Positions 5,422 to 56,000 of a DNA stretch of 64,000 bases are shown here, piece by piece; within the stretch, counting starts at the first letter, position 1, and each line of letters begins with the position of its first letter. A model generated the notes under the pieces. It worked only from the letters and a program-made list of their open reading frames with translations. It ran no database searches and was not told the DNA's origin. The DNA comes from Macrostomum lignano. Its lineage: Eukaryota. The DNA is taken from contig NIVC01000264.1 of NCBI GenBank assembly GCA_002269645.1, positions 1 through 64,000 of the forward strand, read 5' to 3'. The position numbers were made by a program, and so were the translations under genes.

Positions 5422-28755
<23,334 letters not shown>

Positions 28756-29893: not shown

Positions 29894-40347
<10,454 letters not shown>

Positions 40348-42430: not shown

Positions 42431-43625
42431 GCTTCGTCGCACTGGCGCTAACCCCACAATACTTCAGTAGAAAGTAGGTCACGCTGCAACATGCCACTCA
42501 TAAAGAATATCCTTGATCTGCATAAACCTGGTAAAATTATTATAAATTTTTAGCCAGTATAAACACACTTTAAATTGCTTACCGTGCAGATAAAGTATAA
42601 AGTGGATGGCTGATTTCCTTACTTTACTCTGGCATTGCTTGAATTAAGCAGCAAAATGCATTTTAGCCCAGTTCCATGACTACAGAGGCTCACTTAATCT
42701 ACAGGAATAAATAGAGGCAGTCTTCACTGTATCTCTGATTTGATTTTGCGGTTCAATGGGCTTTGGGCTTCTTCTTCCAACTGCTTTTGCTGCCACGCTT
42801 ATGATGCTCGGCATCGTATTTTGTATCGGATAGAAAGTGCAGTACACGGACTCGGGCCAGTTCTGGACCAATGGGAAAGCAAGGGCCTGTATTATTGGAC
42901 CAAAAACAAACTTCTTTCCAAAGCGTACAAGCTCTCTTCTCTCTTTCAAAGCAGAATGTAGGAATTCCATTCTAGGAAAGGGAAGCTTAAATATTTGAAG
43001 AACTGAGTGGAACACGCGCTCGTAATGGCCTAATCCACGAGGCACGAGCCAATGCAACATTACTCTCTTGGGGCCCGTGCTATAAAACTAGAAGTTCAGG
43101 GACCGATTGACACTCCTAAATCAATCAAAAGTTGATTTTTTTTTAATTTCTAATCTGGGTGACCAGTTTTTTATCTAATCTGAATGCCGCTTCCTCATCC
43201 TCTTCAATGTTGATGAGTATATATACTTTATTTTACATAGACTTATTTAAACAATATGGGCCAAAGTAACAGTACTTGTTTGTCATTGGTATAGCTTTAC
43301 AATATTAGTGTTACAATTTGTTAAAAAGTAGCTATTGTTATTTCATAGGCGTCTTAGGACAGACTTGAGGTCCTTATTTATATTCTTGCTCCACCCTAGC
43401 TTTATAGCACGGCCCCTGAGGTGTGCAGTGGGTGACTTGTGAATATCAATATCACTTGTGAAAAACCAACTATGGACAGGGTAATAAAAGTAACCCCCCC
43501 CCCCGAGGTTGGGGTGGGGTTGGGCCCCGCACCCACCACCCCATGGCACCCCCTCTCAGTTGGGGCAGAACAAGCGTGCACAAGTTAAACCATCCAATAA
43601 GCCTAAATTCAGGGTTAGGAAGTTT

Positions 43626-43767
43626 ATGACTCATCTAAGTAAACCAGTTGCCTAGAACGCATTTGATTGGCTGGCAGATATATGCTCTCACAAACAAGAA
43701 ATTGACCAAGCTTACGATTAAAACCAATCGTCATTTTCCTTCACCCATTCCGTCCGACGCATATAAG
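43626..43767 (+). promoter_or_regulatory. Compact candidate Pol II promoter of the secreted repeat-protein gene
   Basis: ATGACTCAT (AP-1-type) at 43626-43634, TGATTGGCT (inverted CCAAT) at 43664-43672, ACCAAT at ~43724, and TATAAG at 43762-43767, about 45 bp before the ATG at 43811. Confidence 0.5.
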
Positions 43768-43810
43768 TAAGCCCGGATAAAGTAAACTAAATAAAGTAAA
43801 CTAGCCAGCC

Positions 43811-44908
43811 ATGTCCCGATTCAGTCTGTACTGTTTGTGCATTTTCTTTGTCTCAGCGGCTCTGTTTGCTGCTGCCTACGGCGGTGGCGACCAACAAGGA
43901 AAGGAGCGCAACAAAGATGTCCAGCGTTTCAATTACAACTACGGCGGCAGGCGTGGCGTCGCAGGCCGAGAGTATGCTCGCTACTATAAGTACGACAAGC
44001 ATGCCCACAAAGACGAGCGTGGCTATTACGCCAAAAAGGCTGTAGAACACGACAAGCAGAACAAGAACAAGTACAATCGGTACCGTCCGTACAGAAAGTA
44101 CAGACAAGACAAGTACAGAAAGTACAGACAAGACAAGTATAGAAAGTACAGGCAAGACAAGTACAGAAAGTACAGACAAGACAAGTACAGAAAGTACAGA
44201 CAAGACAAGTATAGAAAGTACAGGCAAGACAAGTACAGAAAGTACAGACAAGACAAGTACAGAAAGTACAGACAAGACAAGTACAGAAAGTACAGACAAG
44301 ACAAGTACAGAAAGTACAGGCAAGACAAGTACAGAAAGTACAGGCAAGACAAGTACAGAAAGTACAGGCAAGACAAGTACAGAAAGTACAGGCAAGACAA
44401 GTACAGAAAGTACAGGCAGAACAAGTATCAAAAGTATGGAAAATTTAGAAAACATCACACTAATAAGAGGCGAGCTAACAAGAAGATCGGCAAACTTGAT
44501 GATAAGACTAAGAAAACTAAGAAGCCTGACCAGAAGCCGGACAAGCCCGACCAGAAGCCGGACAAACCCGACCAGAAGCCGGACAAGCCCGACCAGAAGC
44601 CGGACAAGCCCGACCAGAAGCCGGACAAGCCCGACCAGAAGCCGGACAAACCCGACCAGAAGCCGGACAAGCCCGACCAGAAGCCGGACAAGCCCGACCA
44701 GAAGCCGGACAAACCCGACCAGAAGCCGGACAAGCCCGACCAGAAGCCGGACAAGCCCGACCAGAAGCCGGACAAGCCCGACCAGAAGCCAGACAAACCC
44801 GACCAGAAGCCGGACAAGCCCGACCAGAAGCCGGACAAGCCCGATCAGAAGCCGGACAAGCCTGACCAGACGTCGGAAACGCCTCACCAGAAGTCAATCG
44901 AAGTCTAA
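43811..44908 (+). CDS. Intronless secreted low-complexity protein (365 aa): signal peptide, Tyr/Lys/Arg-rich region with (YRKYRQDK)x14, then (KPDQKPD)x16
   Basis: Single ORF with an ATG and an N-terminal hydrophobic signal peptide (MSRFSLYCLCIFFVSAALFAAAYG). Unique non-repeat N-terminal, linker and C-terminal segments. Repeat units of 24 and 21 nt keep frame, and unit variants are synonymous apart from the terminal QDK-to-QNK unit. Upstream TATA; AATAAA at 44946-44951. Confidence 0.85.
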   Translation: MSRFSLYCLCIFFVSAALFAAAYGGGDQQGKERNKDVQRFNYNYGGRRGVAGREYARYYKYDKHAHKDERGYYAKKAVEHDKQNKNKYNRYRPYRKYRQDKYRKYRQDKYRKYRQDKYRKYRQDKYRKYRQDKYRKYRQDKYRKYRQDKYRKYRQDKYRKYRQDKYRKYRQDKYRKYRQDKYRKYRQDKYRKYRQDKYRKYRQNKYQKYGKFRKHHTNKRRANKKIGKLDDKTKKTKKPDQKPDKPDQKPDKPDQKPDKPDQKPDKPDQKPDKPDQKPDKPDQKPDKPDQKPDKPDQKPDKPDQKPDKPDQKPDKPDQKPDKPDQKPDKPDQKPDKPDQKPDKPDQKPDKPDQTSETPHQKSIEV

Positions 44909-44945: not shown

Positions 44946-44951
44946 AATAAA
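44946..44951 (+). terminator. Polyadenylation signal AATAAA of the secreted repeat-protein gene
   Basis: AATAAA 38 nt after the TAA stop, followed by T-rich sequence. Confidence 0.55.
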
Positions 44952-50011: not shown

Positions 50012-53000
50012 TCAAGAGGACACGAACTCCAGACTGTCAGGGTCCAAGGCCAGCAGCTGGCTCAGTTGCCAAGGCGATTTGGGGCCAGTCAGAGCCGGCG
50101 CGACCAGCTGGAATCCCGGCAGGCTGCCGCGGCTTCTCAGCTCGACCAGCTGCGACGAGCTCCAGCGATGCCGGGTGGCCAGACCTCGCGCCGCCGCTGT
50201 CGCTTCTCGTTGCCAGGCGACCAGTGATGCGGCGGTCAGCGCGTCGGACTGAAGCCGGGTGAGCTCGGCTGAGACTGACACTCCGTAGCTGATGCTCAGG
50301 ACGGAGTGCCGGCTCGACACCAACAGGCGGTCGGAGCCATCAGAGCGGCTGATCGTCAGGGAGATGTCACCAGGCAACTCGAACCGGGATCTGGGATGGG
50401 GGTGGAAGACGGAAAATGAAAAATGAACTTGTTACGAGCTATAATTGGGTAATTTAGACAAACCATCTTGAGATAGCCGACGTTAATAGCTATTTTTAGA
50501 ATCTATTTTTAGTATATTAGACTAGCGCAGCCCCCTTGGGGTGGCCCGAACAAAGACTGAAATGCTATTTTTAATAGCACTCTATCAACCCTTTTTTAGT
50601 TTCATAGCTATTTTTAGAATCTTTTTAGTACCCTCGTATATTAGACTAGCGCACTCCCCCTTGGGGTGGCCTGAACAAAAAAACGGAAAGGTATCTTATT
50701 TCATCAGCATTTCATCACTATTTAAAAAAGGATAATAAGTAAATATCCAGTAGTAAGATTGCCATCGACCCATATTTGACTGGCTGATGCACATGTACGA
50801 AAATATGATAACAATGACAGTTGCAAACGAGGGAAATTGATGGAGAAGGTACAGTAAAACACAACCTAGATAGACATAGACGAAAAACATGATCTTTCTT
50901 ATCGTCGGGCATGTTGACAGCTTTCAGTCAGGGCTATCTTGTAAATCGGTCTTCGTATTTGAAAACAAATGCCATTCTTCCAACCTGAGCACTAAAGCAG
51001 CTCCCATACTCGCATAACTCCTCACCTTGTCAAATCAACAGAGCTGCCAAACACGGCCTGCAGGTGCGTGTTCATCAGGCCAGCCCGCTCAGGCCAGGCC
51101 AGGTGCACCACCTGCTTGTCCCCCTCCAGTCCCGGGAACGGCACCAGCTCGGAGCCGTTGACCGCCGCCATGGCGAGCTGCTTCACCACCTGCGGCACCT
51201 GATCGCCGTGGAACTCCGGCACCGAGACTCGAATCCGAGGCCGCGATTCCGACCAGCCGTCGCCGCGACTTTCGCCGTAGTCGACGCTGAGCAGCAGCCC
51301 CGGATGGAGCGTCGGCCCCGTCGAGTTCAGCGCCAAGCCGCCGCCGCTGCCGCTGTCGATCTTCTCGATCATCGACAGTCGCTGGAAGGCGGCCAGGCTG
51401 TCCGCCAGCGCAGAGGACAGCACGGATGTCGGCGAATCCCGCAGACCAGCCAACGGGCTTGTCAGCGAGCTCCCTGCCGTCGAGTCCATCGCCGATACAA
51501 TGGTCGCCGTCGAAGCTTCCGGACGAACGTTGAAGTTGGCCAGCCAGAAGTTTGGGCGGGACACCGCTAGCGAGTCGTAGGCGGCGTCGGCTTCACCAGC
51601 GAGATGGTCAAATGTCAGGCCGTCTAGATTGGTCAAGCCGAGAGGCGAGTCGCCGAAGCCGGCGTGCAGGCGGCGCGCCAAGCCGGAGTAGTCGGGGGCG
51701 GCCCATTGGCCGGTGAGGGGGTCGTACACCCGCTGCCCGGGCGGCAGCAGAACCAGCTGTGCGTCGGGGTCGTGGATGCCGCCGCGGTAGCCGAAGGGCA
51801 GCTGCGCGGTCTGCTTGGAGACGGTGAGCAGGCCGGTGTGCGAGTAGCTTAGCTGGTTCAGCGCGATGCCGCGGCTATCTAGAAGGGCCAGCGGCGAGCC
51901 CAGATGGTCGCACACAATGTAGGCCCGCTCTCCGTTGGTTTCCATAGCAACTAATTGACCGGTGCGATTCTCATAGACAAAGGTTGCCAGCCGGTTGCCA
52001 TGCGGGAAGAAGGCGTGGCTGACTCGCCAAGGGCTGGCCGGATCGGCGTACATCAGCTGGAAGTCGCGGCTCCGGTCCAGCAGGTCCAGACGGGCGACCA
52101 GGCGGTCCCTGGAGTCGTACAGGTAGTGCAGGCTGTACACCTGCGTGCCTCCGTCCGCCACGCAGTCAGCTCGCAGCAGCTGGCCTTTGGCGTTGAACCG
52201 GAAGTGCTCCGTGTGCCCTGGCAGCTTCCGGTTCCGGCGCCAGCTGAGGAAGCCGTCGGCGTCGAAGCCGAGCCCGACGCTACCAACCGACGTCGGCAGG
52301 CCACGGCTGTCGTAGGTGTAGTTCAGCCACTCCGCCGCGGCCGGCGGAGGCGACTCAATTGAGCGGGCGGCGATTCGACCGTCGCCGCGGTAAATAATCC
52401 GCTGCCGACTGGTAACCTGGCCGCGCTGGGCCTGGGTCAGCTGCGGTGGGTGTTGGGGATGTTGGGATTATGGAGAAATTGTGACTTTGGGGATGTTGGG
52501 ATTAGGGGGATATAAGGCTACTGGGGCTACTGGGGATATTGGGATAGTTGACATTATTGGGACATTAAGGATACTGGACATTGGGACAATGAAATACTGG
52601 GACTTCTGATGCATAAAACATAGGAATCTGAGGATTTTTAGGGATTGTCGGATAAAAGAGTGATATTGGTGTTTGGTGTAACAATTTGGTGTAGCAAATA
52701 AGTTAAACAATTCTAAGCAAAGGCTACTCACCTGCACAGGCCTGCCCAATCGGTCCTTGGCGTACTCCAGTGACACCTGAGCCTCATTTGCCAGGCCGTA
52801 GACCAGCCTCTCTGGCCGTCCCAGGCTGCAGCTGTGCAGCGACAGCACGAACGCCCTGGCATCGAAGCCGCTGCCCGGGCCGCTGGCGAAGTGCAGCGTG
52901 TTCTCCACCAGCCGGCCCATGCTGTCGAAGTGAAACCTGCGCATGGCCCTGCCGTCCTGCAGCGTGATTGTGTGCTTCATCCGGGACACCTCGTATTGGA

Positions 53001-56000
53001 AGCGGATGTCCAGCTGGCCTGTCACGTGACCCCTGACCGGATCCAGCGTCGTGTTTACAACGGTTCGAGCGGCGATGCTGCCGCCGCTGCCGCCAACAAC
53101 GGTTTCTATGGACACTAATCGTAGCTCGGCGTCCAGGGTGTACCGATGATGGACAGGTGCGAGTCCGGACTCGGCTGCGGAGGCCAGGCCGCCAACAAGC
53201 TCAACACTCTCGCTCGCGAGGCAGCCGCCTCTGTAGTTGAACTGCTGGCGGACGGATGTTTCAGCGAGTTGGTCGGTGACCGCGGCCCTGTAGAGCAGTT
53301 TGGTGTCCGGATGGTAGCTGAACTCGGTCCTGGTCAGGCCGTGCACGCTGAGGGCGAGGCGGCGAGGCAGCTCGCCAGCTAAGAAGGAGTTCGCCAGGAG
53401 CCGCTGGCGGCTGGGGTAGGCGAGCGTGGTCAGAGTTTCAGCCGAGTCGAAATCGAACAGGGCGGCCCGGCCGCTCTGCCAAGGCCGGTAGTGCAGGCGG
53501 GTGCCGCCAACGATGCTCTGCGACAGCACCGACTGCCGGACGCCCTCCGGCGAGGTGACGCCACCAAAATTGCCGTTGGCGTTGAGGTGGAAGGTGTGCA
53601 GATTGCCTAGCGGATCCGTGACGGTGTTGGGCTGTGGGGACAGGCATGGGTGGAGCAGTTTGTAAAGGTTGGTTGGTGTGTTTGGGGTTGGTTGGCGTGT
53701 TTGGGGTTTGTTGGCGTGTTTGGGGTTGGTTGGCGTATTTGGGGTTGGTTGGCGTGTTTGGGGTTTGTTGGCGTGTTTGGGGTTGGTTGGCGTATTTGGG
53801 GTTGGTTGGCGTGTTTGGGGTTGGTTGGCGTATTTGGGGTTTGTTGGCGTGTTTGGGGTTGGTTGGCGTATTTGGGGTTGGTTGGCGTGTTTGGGGTTGG
53901 TTGGCGTGTTTGGGGTTTGTTGGCGTGTTTGGGGTTGGTTGGCGTATTTGGGGTTGGTTGGCGTGTTTGGGGTTTGTTGGCGTGTTTGGGGTTGGTTGGC
54001 GTATTTGGGGTTGGTTGGCGTGTTTGGGGTTGGTTGGCGTATTTGGGGTTTGTTGGCGTGTTTGGGGTTGGTTGGCGTATTTGGGGTTTGTTGGCGTGTT
54101 TGGGGTTGGTTGGCGTATTCGGGGTTTGTTGGCGTGTTTGGGGTTGGTTGGCGTATTTGGGGTTGGTTGGCGTGTTTGGGGTTTGTTGGCGTGTTTGGGG
54201 TTGGTTGGCGTATTTGGGGTTGGTTGGCGTGTTTGGGGTTTGTTGGCGTGTTTGGGGTTGGTTGGCGTATTTGGGGTTTGTTGGCGTGTTTGGGGTTGGT
54301 TGGCGTATTTGGGGTTTGTTGGCGTGTTTGGGGTTGGTTGGCGTATTCGGGGTTTGTTGGCGTGTTTGGGGTTGGTTGGCGTATTTGGGGTTGGTTGGCG
54401 TGTTTGGGGTTTGTTGGCGTGTTTGGGGTTGGTTGGCGTATTCGGGGTTTGTTGGCGTGTTTGGGGTTGGTTGGCGTATTTGGGGTTGGTTGGCGTGTTT
54501 GGGGTTGGTTGGCGTATTTGGGGTTGGTTGGCGTATTTGGGGTTGGTTGGGGTGTTTGGGGTTGGTTGGGGTGTTTGGGGTTGGTTGGGGTGTTTGTGGT
54601 TGGTTGGGGTGTTTGGGGTTGGTTGGGGTGTTTGGGGTTGGTTGGGGTGTTTGGGGTTGGTTGGGGTGTTTGGGGTTGGTTGGGGTGTTTGGGGTTGGTT
54701 GGGGTGTTTGGGGTTGGTTGGGGTGTTTGTGGTTGGTTGGCGTGTTTGGGGTTGGTTGGGGTCTTTGGGGTTGGTTGGGGTGTTTGGGGTTGGTTGGGGT
54801 GTTTGGGGTTGGTTGGGGTGTTTGGAGTTGGTTGGTGTGTTTGTGGTTGGCTGGTGTGTTTGGGGTTGGCTGGTGTGTTTGGGGTTGGTTGGTGTGTTTG
54901 GGGTTGGTTGGTGTGTTTGTGGTTGGTTGGCGTGTTTGGGGTTGGCTGGTGTGTTTGGGGTTGGCTGGTGTGTTTGGGGTTGGTTGGTGTGTTTGGGGTT
55001 GGTTGGCGTGTTTGTGGTTGGTTGGCGTGTTTGTGGTTGGTTGGTGTGTTTGTGGTTGGTTGGCGTGTTTAGGGTTGGCTGGTGTGTGTTGGGTTTGGTT
55101 GGCGTGTTTGTGGTTGGTTGGCGTGTTTGTGGTTGGTTGGTGTGTTTGTGGTTGGTTGGCGTGTTTAGGGTTGGCTGGTGTGTGTTGGGTTTGGTTGGCG
55201 TGTTTGTGGTTGGCTGGTGTGTTTGTGGTTGGTTGGCGTGTTTGGGGTTGGCTGGTGTGTGTTGGGTTTGGTTGGCGTGTTTGTGGTTGGTTGGGGTGTT
55301 TGGGGTTGGTTGGGGTGTTTGGGGTTGGTTGGGGTGTTTGGGGTTGGTTGGGGTGTTTGGAGTTGGTTGGTGTGTTTGTGGTTGGCTGGTGTGTTTGGGG
55401 TTGGCTGGTGTGTTTGGGGTTGGTTGGTGTGTTTGGGGTTGGTTGGTGTGTTTGTGGTTGGTTGGCGTGTTTGGGGTTGGCTGGTGTGTTTGGGGTTGGC
55501 TGGTGTGTTTGGGGTTGGTTGGTGTGTTTGGGGTTGGTTGGCGTGTTTGTGGTTGGTTGGCGTGTTTGTGGTTGGTTGGTGTGTTTGTGGTTGGTTGGCG
55601 TGTTTAGGGTTGGCTGGTGTGTGTTGGGTTTGGTTGGCGTGTTTGTGGTTGGTTGGCGTGTTTGTGGTTGGTTGGTGTGTTTGTGGTTGGTTGGCGTGTT
55701 TAGGGTTGGCTGGTGTGTGTTGGGTTTGGTTGGCGTGTTTGTGGTTGGCTGGTGTGTTTGTGGTTGGTTGGCGTGTTTGGGGTTGGCTGGTGTGTGTTGG
55801 GTTTGGTTGGCGTGTTTGTGGTTGGTTGGGGTGTTTGGGGTTGGTTGGGGTCTTTGGGGTTGGTTGGGGTGTTTGGGGTTGGTTGGGGTGTTTGGGGTTG
55901 GTTGGGGTGTTTGGAGTTGGTTGGTGTGTTTGTGGTTGGCTGGTGTGTTTGGGGTTGGCTGGTGTGTTTGGGGTTGGTTGGTGTGTTTGGGGTTGGTTGG

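What the first reader, a model, noticed from the sequence alone, without database searches (positions are those of the whole stretch)
43811..44908. Secreted diblock repeat protein: cationic Tyr-rich (YRKYRQDK)x14 plus zwitterionic (KPDQKPD)x16; candidate bioadhesive, eggshell or cement protein
Seen: a single-exon ORF with a signal peptide (likely cleavage after AYG) and a Tyr/Gly/Arg-rich unique segment. It has 14 copies of an 8-aa unit (44090-44425; 25% Tyr, net +3 per unit), a basic linker, and 16 copies of a charge-neutral Pro-rich 7-aa unit (44522-44857). It has no Cys after the signal peptide. Established: Tyr next to Lys/Arg is the substrate pattern for DOPA-based adhesion and quinone tanning (mussel foot proteins, flatworm eggshell proteins), and Lys/Arg-rich repeat proteins are part of flatworm adhesive secretions. 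Inference: this is a block-copolymer-like structural secretion with a sticky or cross-linkable block and a hydrophilic spacer. I recognise no known family.
Basis: partly seen in the sequence, partly recalled or inferred. Interest (0 to 1): 0.85.

Follow-up and report, generated by a model that had tools for sequence, protein, structure and literature searches.

The report
Orphan secreted two-block repeat protein gene
The flatworm Macrostomum lignano carries a compact gene, very probably real and with no known relatives, for a secreted, very positively charged protein made of a tyrosine-rich repeat block and a proline-rich repeat block; it looks like a sticky or cross-linkable secretion, but nothing here shows where or whether it is used.

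Summary
ORF 43811-44908 (+) encodes 365 aa: a signal-peptide-like start, a Tyr/Gly/Arg-rich segment, 14 x YRKYRQDK (44090-44425), a basic linker, 16 x KPDQKPD (44522-44857), and no Cys after the leader.

The window is the first 64 kb of Macrostomum lignano contig NIVC01000264.1. Tandem repeats cover 44.5% of it, and all six frames are open across both arrays, so ORF length proves nothing.

A real gene is supported by:
- 141 non-array codons open in frame (shuffle P about 4e-4);
- 7 of 8 variable repeat columns synonymous (P about 0.003);
- GC3 > GC1 > GC2 with local codon preferences;
- TATAAG at -49, three CCAAT-type motifs, and AATAAA 38 nt after the stop.

No homologue, domain or fold match was found, so it is an orphan. 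AlphaFold predicts one long helix over the Tyr block (pLDDT about 95) and an extended proline block.

Best reading: a secreted polycationic structural protein that binds polyanions and can be cross-linked through Tyr, Lys and Gln. The tissue is unknown; eggshell or egg cement is my leading guess. The adhesive/eggshell idea is plausible but untested, and I could obtain no expression data. Interest is moderate.

The parts
43594..43598 (+). CCAAT motif, -217 from the ATG
   Evidence: sequence
43666..43670 (+). Inverted CCAAT (ATTGG, within tgATTGGctg, NF-Y-like), -145
   Evidence: The NF-Y reading rests on my own knowledge of the consensus.
43724..43728 (+). CCAAT motif, -87
   Evidence: Three CCAAT-type motifs lie in about 135 bp, against about 0.4 per 150 bp in the window as a whole.
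43762..43767 (+). TATAAG, a TATA-box-like motif 49 nt upstream of the ATG; implies a 5' UTR of roughly 15-20 nt
   Evidence: The TSS position is inferred, not measured.
43777..43803 (+). 14-bp direct duplication ATAAAGTAAACTAA x1.9 just upstream of the ATG (in or near the 5' UTR)
43811..44908 (+). Complete coding sequence, 365 codons plus TAA, no intron needed
   Evidence: called as a gene on NIVC01000264.1
43811..43882 (+). Signal-peptide-like leader (aa 1-22 or 1-24): MSR, hydrophobic core, AAAYG
   Evidence: hydropathy and the -3/-1 rule; heuristic
43883..44089 (+). Non-array Tyr/Gly/Arg/Lys-rich segment (aa 25-93, net +10, 14% Tyr); its C-terminal half looks like old, diverged A-type units kept in frame
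   Evidence: the A block aligns in frame to 43979-44137 at 43%
44090..44425 (+). Block A: 14 x 24 bp = 14 x YRKYRQDK, net +43, 25% Tyr; predicted as part of one long alpha-helix (aa 70-226)
44426..44521 (+). Basic linker of 32 aa (YQKYGKFRKHHTNKRRANKKIGKLDDKTKKTK), net +12; degenerate A- and B-type units
44522..44857 (+). Block B: 16 x 21 bp = 16 x KPDQKPD, net 0, Pro every 3-4 residues; predicted non-helical and extended
44858..44908 (+). C-terminal tail KPDQTSETPHQKSIEV (degenerate B units) and the TAA stop
44946..44951 (+). AATAAA polyadenylation signal 38 nt after the stop, followed by T/GT-rich sequence

Best explanation
This is a real, taxonomically restricted, single-exon gene of Macrostomum lignano. 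It has its own TATA/CCAAT-type promoter and an AATAAA signal. It encodes a secreted protein of about 43 kDa that is Cys-free, almost glycan-free and extremely basic. The protein has two parts. The first is a polycationic aromatic block, (YRKYRQDK)14 plus flanks, which probably forms a single alpha-helical rod of about 150 residues. Because the unit length is 2 x 4, the rod carries continuous i/i+4 ladders of Tyr-Arg and Tyr-Lys (cation-pi) and Lys-Asp (salt bridge). The second is a zwitterionic block, (KPDQKPD)16, with Pro every third or fourth residue, which stays extended and hydrated. Inferred mechanism: the cationic Tyr block binds polyanions or negatively charged surfaces, such as acidic glycans, other secretory-granule contents and mineral surfaces. 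Condensation with a polyanion would let it be packed in granules. Once released, it offers 40 Tyr, 83 Lys and 37 Gln for covalent curing, by tyrosinase/quinone-Lys, peroxidase/di-Tyr or transglutaminase Gln-Lys chemistry. The B block would act as a non-sticky hydrated spacer. The producing tissue is not known. [quoted passage not shown] Both arrays are young, in-frame products of the minisatellite expansion that pervades this genome, so copy number is probably polymorphic. Shown here: the ORF anatomy, the frame-specific conservation, the lack of relatives and the predicted secondary structure. Inferred: secretion, binding, cross-linking and tissue.
For: Organism and locus: an exact match to NIVC01000264.1 of GCA_002269645.1. 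That accession series is the Mlig_3_7 assembly (PMC5730564). Coding evidence: 141 non-array codons are open (P about 4e-4). Seven of 8 variable columns in the two arrays are third-position synonymous transitions, and the only replacement is D->N in the last A unit (P about 0.0026 for transitions). Non-coding arrays in the window with periods divisible by 3 show no phase bias. Degenerate flanking units keep the frame. GC3 > GC1 > GC2, and the preference for C/G-ending codons (TAC, AAG, GAC, GGC) matches the teneurin and RasGEF exons nearby. Gene signals: TATAAG at -49, CCAAT at -87 and -217, ATTGG at -145, and AATAAA at +38. Secretion: leader-like N-terminus followed by GRAVY -2.8. Structure: AF2 predicts a helix at 70-226 with pLDDT about 95, and coil for block B with pLDDT 55-60; the i/i+4 ladders are. 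Chemistry: 35 of 40 Tyr adjoin K/R, each unit of both blocks holds one Gln and two Lys, and there is no sequon. Context from the literature: flatworm eggshell precursors are Tyr-rich and cured by tyrosinase to DOPA-quinone, which reacts with Lys (PMC2758302, PMC3499410). M. lignano has oocyte eggshell granules and shell and cement glands (PMC4490696). Cationic K/R repeats are functional in M. lignano secretions (Mlig-ap1, PMC6410801).
Against: I could obtain no transcript, protein or in situ evidence. No homologue was found anywhere, including among the UniRef M. lignano proteins that the database does hold, so conservation across species is unproven. The arrays resemble the dozens of non-coding minisatellites around them in unit length and identity. 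All six frames are open across them, and the antisense frame that shares wobble positions is also 6 of 8 synonymous. Tyr is flanked by K/R, not by Gly as in trematode eggshell precursors, and Gly is only 3.2%. The AF2 helix comes from a single sequence, and such predictions for charged repeats can be over-confident. With net +3 per 8 residues, helix stability in isolation is doubtful. No DOPA-forming enzyme or partner gene lies nearby: the neighbours are RapGEF-like, bHLH and teneurin genes.
Confidence: 0.4

Rival explanations
1. This is not a gene. Two neighbouring minisatellites whose periods happen to be multiples of 3 sit next to a fortuitously open unique stretch that starts with a hydrophobic run.
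For: Tandem repeats cover 44.5% of the window, and 17 of 39 arrays of at least 200 bp have a period divisible by 3. All six frames are stop-free over both arrays. Another ORF, 6760..5705 (-), also shows a leader-like start fused to an array. There is no homologue and no entry in the searched protein collections. A look-alike 24-bp array (TACAGACAAGATAA...) occurs as an evidently non-coding minisatellite in an unrelated AT-rich contig.
Against: The 141 non-array codons are open at P about 4e-4. Variation is synonymous in 7 of 8 columns, whereas control arrays show no phase bias. Codon-position GC and codon choice match real exons. TATA, CCAAT and AATAAA motifs lie at canonical distances. The degenerate flanking units are kept in frame.
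Confidence: 0.15
2. It is a prostate-gland (seminal fluid) protein transferred to the mating partner. A polycationic secreted orphan could bind sperm, the antrum wall or acidic secretions, rather than act as an eggshell or adhesive material.
For: In M. lignano, a strikingly large share of tail-limited transcripts are prostate-limited: 76 in one screen. Most of those have signal peptides and little or no annotation, as expected for fast-evolving reproductive genes (PMC5977470; PMC4490696). The candidate is a small, secreted, single-exon orphan. It is rich in Lys and Gln in every unit. From my own knowledge, that is the substrate pattern of transglutaminase-clotted seminal proteins in other animals.
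Against: There is no expression evidence either way. No feature of the sequence is specific to the prostate. I know of no report of a mating plug or clot in this species (own knowledge).
Confidence: 0.2
3. It is a defensive or digestive secretion of epidermal (rhabdite) or pharyngeal glands: a cationic histatin-like, proline-rich-protein-like polymer that binds microbes, polyphenols or diatom silica. Alternatively, it is a polyprotein cut at basic sites into short cationic peptides.
For: Net charge is about +62 and pI about 10. The linker YQKYGKFRKHHTNKRR has a His/Tyr/Lys/Arg-rich composition. From my own knowledge, that composition and the Pro-rich repeat tail recall salivary histatins and basic proline-rich proteins. 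There are 22 adjacent basic pairs.
Against: There are no R-x-K/R-R furin-type sites, and no Gly for amidation or spacer architecture typical of peptide precursors. The 8-aa products would be identical and very short. There is no similarity to any known antimicrobial or salivary family.
Confidence: 0.1
4. It is a component of the duo-gland temporary adhesive organs of the tail plate: an extra cohesive cationic protein, or a granule-packing partner of Mlig-ap1 and Mlig-ap2.
For: Mlig-ap1 works through K/R-rich cationic repeats, and adhesion is blocked by polyanions (PMC6410801). The candidate's A block is a comparable polycation.
Against: The proven adhesive proteins are giant, Cys-rich and multi-domain (C-type lectin, vWD, TIL, EGF, TSP-1), and RNAi of those two alone abolishes adhesion. 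The candidate has no such domain and no Cys. None of its diagnostic peptides occurs in the held footprint, tail and pull-down datasets of that paper. That last point is weak, because trypsin would shred this protein.
Confidence: 0.07

Closest known systems
Trematode eggshell precursor proteins (p14, p19, p48; Fasciola vitelline proteins)
   Same: They are secreted, repetitive, Tyr-rich flatworm proteins: 11-26% Tyr there, against 11.7% overall and 25% in block A here. They carry abundant Lys as the nucleophile for quinone tanning (PMC2758302, PMC3499410).
   Different: Those proteins are Gly-rich (10-44%), and their Tyr is typically followed by Gly. Here Gly is 3.2% and Tyr is followed by Arg in 29 of 40 cases. 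No sequence similarity was found. There is no TES domain. The Pro-rich zwitterionic block has no counterpart. M. lignano has no vitellaria; eggshell granules form in the oocyte (PMC4490696).
Mlig-ap1 K/R-rich regions (M. lignano adhesive protein 1)
   Same: Same species. Both are secreted, with long, extremely cationic Lys/Arg repeat regions that act by electrostatic binding to polyanions (PMC6410801).
   Different: Mlig-ap1 is more than 5,000 aa, Cys-rich, and has lectin, vWD, C8, TIL and EGF domains. The candidate is 365 aa with no domain and no Cys. It is Tyr-rich, and there is no sequence match.
Mussel foot proteins (mfp-1, mfp-5) and sandcastle-worm cement proteins (comparison from my own knowledge)
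   Same: They are small to medium secreted, basic, repetitive proteins in which Tyr sits beside Lys. They are cohesive through cation-pi contacts and are cured through DOPA.
   Different: No homology was detected. DOPA is untested. Those proteins are Gly/Ser/Pro-rich around Tyr and largely disordered. Here the Tyr block is predicted helical, has Arg as well as Lys, and has one Asp per unit.
Charged single alpha-helix (SAH, ER/K-type) domains (comparison from my own knowledge)
   Same: A long stretch without a hydrophobic seam is predicted as one continuous helix, with i/i+4 ladders that include a Lys-Asp-Lys salt-bridge stripe.
   Different: SAH domains are intracellular, near-neutral and rich in E/K/R. 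This block is extracellular, carries net +3 per 8 residues and is 25% Tyr. Its stability is unproven.
Pro-rich charged spacers (the K-P-D/E repeat linkers of the only database hits, P0001-P0003)
   Same: Block B shares 59-61% identity with KPD/KPE-type repeats in unrelated secreted or surface proteins. All look like extended hydrophilic spacers.
   Different: The matches are compositional only. The flanking domains differ, and nothing indicates common descent.

Membership tests
Protein-coding gene (as opposed to an open minisatellite) | Open reading frame maintained through non-repetitive sequence | tested here: met
   The 141 non-array codons are open; only 0.04% of shuffles are. The other two forward frames of the N-terminal region contain stops.
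Protein-coding gene (as opposed to an open minisatellite) | Purifying selection on one frame (variation concentrated at synonymous sites) | tested here: met
   Seven of 8 variable columns are synonymous in the ATG frame, P about 0.0026. Control arrays show no phase bias. Caveat: the wobble-sharing antisense frame scores 6 of 8.
Protein-coding gene (as opposed to an open minisatellite) | Transcription and polyadenylation | not testable with these tools
   Only motifs are available: TATAAG at -49, CCAAT-type motifs, and AATAAA at +38. No M. lignano RNA data are reachable. An exact look-up of a 3' partial product found nothing.
Classically secreted protein | N-terminal signal peptide with n, h and c regions and a -3/-1 cleavage site; no other hydrophobic segment | tested here: met
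   MSR, then a 16-19-residue hydrophobic core, then AAA|YG|G; the rest has GRAVY -2.8. This is a heuristic, not SignalP.
Trematode eggshell precursors p14/p19/p48 | High Tyr content | tested here: met
   11.7% of the mature protein and 25% of block A, against 11-26% in those families (PMC3499410).
Trematode eggshell precursors p14/p19/p48 | Gly-rich, with Tyr commonly followed by Gly | tested here: not met
   Gly is 3.2%, and 2 of 40 Tyr are followed by Gly. The criterion is from PMC2758302 and PMC3499410.
Trematode eggshell precursors p14/p19/p48 | Sequence homology, or a TES domain in the associated family | tested here: not met
   No Pfam family. No homologue in the word-indexed or exhaustive searches.
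Trematode eggshell precursors p14/p19/p48 | Made in eggshell-forming cells and cross-linked by tyrosinase via DOPA-quinone | not testable with these tools
   Needs ISH, DOPA staining or mass spectrometry.
DOPA adhesive proteins (mussel foot protein type) | Post-translational Tyr to DOPA conversion | not testable with these tools
   Needs NBT/redox-cycling stain or mass spectrometry.
DOPA adhesive proteins (mussel foot protein type) | Tyr adjacent to Lys/Arg in a basic repeat protein | tested here: met
   35 of 40 Tyr adjoin K/R; pI about 10.
DOPA adhesive proteins (mussel foot protein type) | Sequence relationship to known mfp families | tested here: not met
   All 147 exhaustive-search hits were low-complexity matches to block A. 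The 8 I read were period-8 repeat or compositional matches; 2 of the 147 reached back to residue 17 and both were spurious. The database includes UniRef.
M. lignano adhesive proteins Mlig-ap1/ap2 | Very large, Cys-rich, with lectin, vWD, TIL, EGF or TSP-1 domains | tested here: not met
   365 aa, no Pfam domain, no Cys in the mature protein. Criteria are from PMC6410801.
M. lignano adhesive proteins Mlig-ap1/ap2 | Detected in adhesive footprints | tested here: inconclusive
   Diagnostic peptides are absent from the four held supplementary files. However, the protein yields almost no usable tryptic peptides, and the search database used there may have lacked it.
M. lignano prostate-limited putative seminal fluid proteins (Mlig-pro) | Prostate-limited in situ signal | not testable with these tools
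   The class is defined by ISH (PMC5977470). No sequences are held in its supplements.
Single alpha-helix (SAH) domain | Long helix without a hydrophobic core, stabilised by i/i+4 charge pairs | tested here: inconclusive
   AF2 predicts a helix at 70-226 with pLDDT about 95, from a single sequence. One K-D-K ladder is accompanied by Y-R and Y-K ladders. The net +3 per unit argues against stability.

The most novel reading that the evidence does not exclude
The protein is the curing or adhesive polymer of the M. lignano egg envelope or egg glue, or of another permanent secretion. In this reading the helical polycationic Tyr-Arg/Tyr-Lys ladder rod sticks to negatively charged surfaces and is tanned through its Tyr and Lys, while the (KPDQKPD)n tail forms a hydrated brush. 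That would be a natural rod-coil diblock adhesive unrelated to mussel, sandcastle-worm or trematode proteins, and the first structural egg-attachment protein known from a free-living flatworm.
Probability: 0.18. Interest if true: 0.65.

Novelty: new variant of a known kind. Interest (0 to 1): 0.4.

Why it matters
If the gene is expressed and its product is a cured or adhesive secretion, it would add an independent and very simple design to the short list of sequenced underwater structural proteins. That design has two near-perfect short repeats, no Cys, no glycans, a predicted helical cation-pi ladder and a zwitterionic proline spacer. It would come from a transgenic, RNAi-amenable model animal, and peptides this simple are easy to synthesise for materials tests.

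It is also a clean example of how a minisatellite-rich genome can build protein blocks. In-frame arrays as young as the surrounding junk arrays nevertheless show synonymous-only variation.

If it turns out to be just one more fast-evolving orphan gland product, it is of local interest for M. lignano annotation only.

Tried and rejected
- Whole-protein homology search: only three KPD/KPE low-complexity matches.
- N-terminal 109-aa search: nothing, even at E <= 10.
- Exhaustive phmmer of aa 1-237 against 1.84 billion representatives: 147 hits, all low-complexity matches to block A. The 8 I read were period-8 repeat or compositional matches.
- The best look-alike, P0069, traces to an AT-rich metagenome contig where the array runs into stops. 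I rejected it as a homologue.
- Pfam and Rfam over the window: nothing on the ORF.
- Foldseek against the PDB with the AF2 model: no match.
- Exact-sequence cluster look-up: not in the collection.
- Exact look-up of a guessed 3' partial product in assemblies of sequencing runs: none.
- Full-text search for the repeat peptides: no paper.
- Peptide search in the supplements of the adhesion paper, and DNA-fragment search in the supplements of the positional RNA-seq paper: no occurrence.
- The eggshell/cement-gland transcript RNA815_13 of that paper is a 16-kb vWA/collagen-like gene, not this one.
- Paralogue search within the window by tblastn and blastn: none.
- Neuropeptide or polyprotein precursor reading: rejected for lack of furin-type sites, amidation Gly and spacers.
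- Nuclear basic protein (protamine-like) reading: rejected because of the hydrophobic leader.
Full report
WHAT IS THERE

The ORF at 43811-44908 (+) runs from the first possible start codon after an in-frame stop to TAA and encodes 365 aa.
- a hydrophobic leader (aa 1-22 or 1-24);
- a non-repeat Tyr/Gly/Arg/Lys-rich segment (aa 25-93, net +10);
- 14 units of YRKYRQDK (aa 94-205; nt 44090-44425), the last being YRKYRQNK;
- a 32-aa basic linker (net +12);
- 16 units of KPDQKPD (aa 238-349; nt 44522-44857);
- a 16-aa tail.

Tandem Repeats Finder reports the two arrays with periods of 24 and 21 bp and 96% and 94% matches. The mature protein is about 43 kDa with pI about 10, net charge about +62 to +64 and GRAVY -2.8. 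It has no Cys, no N-glycosylation sequon and only 7 Ser+Thr.

The leader has one Arg, a hydrophobic core of 16-19 residues and the sequence AAAYGGG. Cleavage after Ala22 or after Gly24 both satisfy the -3/-1 rule. This is a heuristic; no SignalP was available.

WHERE IT COMES FROM

The exact protein is encoded once in the assembly collection, on NIVC01000264.1 of GCA_002269645.1, at record positions identical to the window coordinates. [quoted passage not shown] That paper reports that simple and tandem repeats make up 15% of the genome.

This window is far denser. Tandem repeats cover 44.5% of it, in 39 arrays of at least 200 bp, and 17 of those have a period divisible by 3.

The neighbouring genes are all on the minus strand:
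- a bHLH exon (19.5-19.9 kb);
- a RapGEF-like gene (RasGEF domain at 31.2-31.7 kb, RasGEF_N at 37.4-37.9 kb);
- teneurin-type YD-shell exons (51.0-53.5 kb).

The candidate lies between the RapGEF-like 5' region and the teneurin 3' end, on the opposite strand. It has no paralogue in the window.

IS IT A GENE OR AN OPEN MINISATELLITE?

This is the key question, because all six reading frames are stop-free across both arrays. ORF length therefore carries no weight. Five independent lines favour a gene.

1. The 141 codons outside the arrays are open. Only 0.04% of composition-matched shuffles are open, or 1.1% for the 93 N-terminal codons alone. The other two forward frames of that region contain stops.

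2. Among the 30 repeat units there are 8 variable columns. Seven are third-position transitions that are synonymous in the ATG frame. The eighth is D->N in the last, degenerating A unit. The probability of at least 7 of 8 is about 0.0026 if transitions fall at random. Non-coding arrays in the same window with periods divisible by 3 show no phase preference. One caveat applies: the antisense frame that shares wobble positions scores 6 of 8. However, that frame is broken by stops in the linker and encodes hydrophobic nonsense.

3. Degenerate A-like and B-like units flanking the arrays are kept in the same frame.

4. The non-array codons show GC3 > GC1 > GC2. They have the same C/G-ending preferences (TAC, AAG, GAC, GGC) as the teneurin and RasGEF exons nearby.

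5. Gene signals sit at canonical distances: TATAAG at -49; CCAAT at -87 and -217; ATTGG at -145, in an NF-Y-like context (own knowledge); a purine at -3 of the ATG; and AATAAA 38 nt after the stop, followed by T-rich sequence.

In a crude screen, only 2 of 68 ATG ORFs of at least 80 aa in the window combine a leader-like start with a hydrophilic body. The other is 6760..5705 (-). It lacks a charged n-region, and its product changes repeat motif along the array, which is consistent with the 3% indels TRF reports there.

I put the probability of a real gene at about 0.8. What is missing is any transcript evidence, which these tools cannot provide (one search was a failed long shot).

RELATIVES

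None were found.
- The whole protein hits only three KPD/KPE-type low-complexity linkers.
- The N-terminal 109 aa hit nothing at E <= 10.
- An exhaustive phmmer of aa 1-237 against 1.84 billion representatives gives 147 hits, all of them low-complexity matches to block A. The 8 I read were period-8 repeat or compositional matches, mostly translated minisatellites.
- The closest look-alike, P0069, sits on an AT-rich metagenome contig and is a non-coding array.
- Pfam finds nothing and Foldseek against the PDB finds nothing.

The word-indexed database does contain UniRef M. lignano proteins. The gene therefore has no annotated counterpart or paralogue there. It is an orphan as far as these libraries reach. 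Macrostomum transcriptomes were not searchable.

STRUCTURE AND LIKELY MECHANISM

AlphaFold2, run on the single sequence, predicts one continuous helix from residue 70 to 226 with pLDDT about 95 across block A. It predicts an extended, non-helical block B with pLDDT 55-60.

The 8-residue unit is 2 x 4. In a helix, the four i/i+4 stripes therefore read Y-R-Y-R, Y-K-Y-K, K-D-K-D and R-Q-R-Q. These are two cation-pi ladders, one salt-bridge ladder and one polar ladder. This rationalises the prediction, but it remains inference. Single-sequence predictions for charged repeats can be over-confident, and net +3 per unit would oppose helix formation without counter-ions.

Block B has Pro every 3-4 residues and equal numbers of Lys and Asp. 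I infer an extended, strongly hydrated, non-sticky spacer, like the KPD/KPE linkers it matches compositionally.

Of 40 mature Tyr, 35 adjoin Lys or Arg, and every unit of both blocks has one Gln and two Lys. The protein is therefore a good substrate, on paper, for three kinds of curing: tyrosinase/quinone-Lys tanning, peroxidase di-Tyr formation and transglutaminase Gln-Lys cross-links. Its huge positive charge predicts binding to, and condensation with, polyanions and negatively charged surfaces.

WHICH SECRETION?

This is unknown.

For an egg-envelope role: flatworm eggshell precursors are Tyr-rich and tanned via DOPA-quinone and Lys (PMC2758302, PMC3499410). [quoted passage not shown]

Against family membership: trematode precursors are Gly-rich with Tyr-Gly motifs. 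This protein is 3.2% Gly, and its Tyr is followed by Arg in 29 of 40 cases.

For a prostate or seminal-fluid role: the base rate is high. A large share of small, secreted, unannotated tail transcripts in this species are prostate-limited (PMC5977470, PMC4490696).

For the adhesive organs: Mlig-ap1 works through cationic K/R repeats (PMC6410801). However, the proven adhesive proteins are giant, Cys-rich, multi-domain molecules. None of the candidate's diagnostic peptides occurs in that paper's held data sets; this is weak evidence, because trypsin shreds this protein.

A defensive or digestive gland product is a further possibility. Processing into short peptides is unlikely, as there are no furin-type sites.

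ORIGIN OF THE BLOCKS

The two arrays have the same unit lengths and the same high unit identity as the dozens of non-coding arrays around them. They show higher-order patterns of variants, meaning recent duplication of multi-unit blocks. They are best seen as young in-frame minisatellite expansions inside an older Tyr/Lys-rich secreted protein. The diverged units survive in the 'unique' N-terminal segment, the linker and the tail. Copy number is probably polymorphic. The 'diblock' architecture may therefore be partly a tolerated by-product rather than a finely selected design.

VERDICT

- Novelty: a new variant of a known kind, namely secreted low-complexity Tyr/Lys-rich structural or gland proteins.
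- Interest is 0.4. It would rise to about 0.65 if the protein proves to be a cured or adhesive material with the predicted rod-coil structure.

Noticed in passing
window 1-64000: Tandem repeats cover 44.5% of the window. There are 39 arrays of at least 200 bp, nearly all with different units (periods 4-31 bp, 74-99% matches), alternating with short unique spacers. Many generate long spurious ORFs in several frames.
   Followed up: partly
window 5705-6760 (-): A 351-aa ATG ORF has a hydrophobic leader-like start ([18 protein letters not shown]) and runs into a 9-bp array (SHPSLP, PATPAT and QPPQPP motifs). It was the only other ORF to pass my crude signal-peptide screen. It lacks a charged n-region and its product changes repeat motif along the array, so it is probably non-coding.
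   Followed up: partly
window 19515-20444 (-): A bHLH DNA-binding domain exon (Pfam HLH, E 3.9e-19, aa 193-244 of the ORF). Upstream, the open frame simply reads on into a 13-bp minisatellite (19907-20254), so the true exon boundary must lie between the two.
   Followed up: no
window 31229-39517 (-): Exons of a RapGEF-like gene (RasGEF domain at 31229-31747, RasGEF_N at 37409-37930), with minisatellites filling the introns. The ORF 38228-39517 reads from unique sequence straight into a 16-bp array.
   Followed up: no
window 51022-53529 (-): Teneurin-type YD-shell exons (PF25023, E 1.5e-18). The best database relative is a 50%-identical M. lignano UniRef protein that carries the evidently wrong name 'TonB_dep_Rec domain-containing protein'.
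   Followed up: no
window 43777-43803 (+): A perfect 14-bp direct duplication (ATAAAGTAAACTAA x1.9) lies between the TATA-like motif and the ATG of the candidate gene. Its significance is unknown.
   Followed up: no
L002 3660-3921: An unrelated AT-rich metagenome contig (ERZ27315792) carries a 24-bp minisatellite (ATACAGACAAGATAAATACCAGAT). Its translation (YRQDKYQIYRQDKY) is 76% identical to block A. This is convergent low complexity, not homology, and shows how easily such arrays mimic this protein.
   Followed up: yes
window 44026-44424 (-) and 44455-44838 (-): The antisense frame that shares wobble positions with the coding frame is also almost invariant across the arrays (FCLYFLYLSC... 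and SGFWSGL...). This is a reminder that period-3 variation alone cannot tell sense from this antisense frame.
   Followed up: yes
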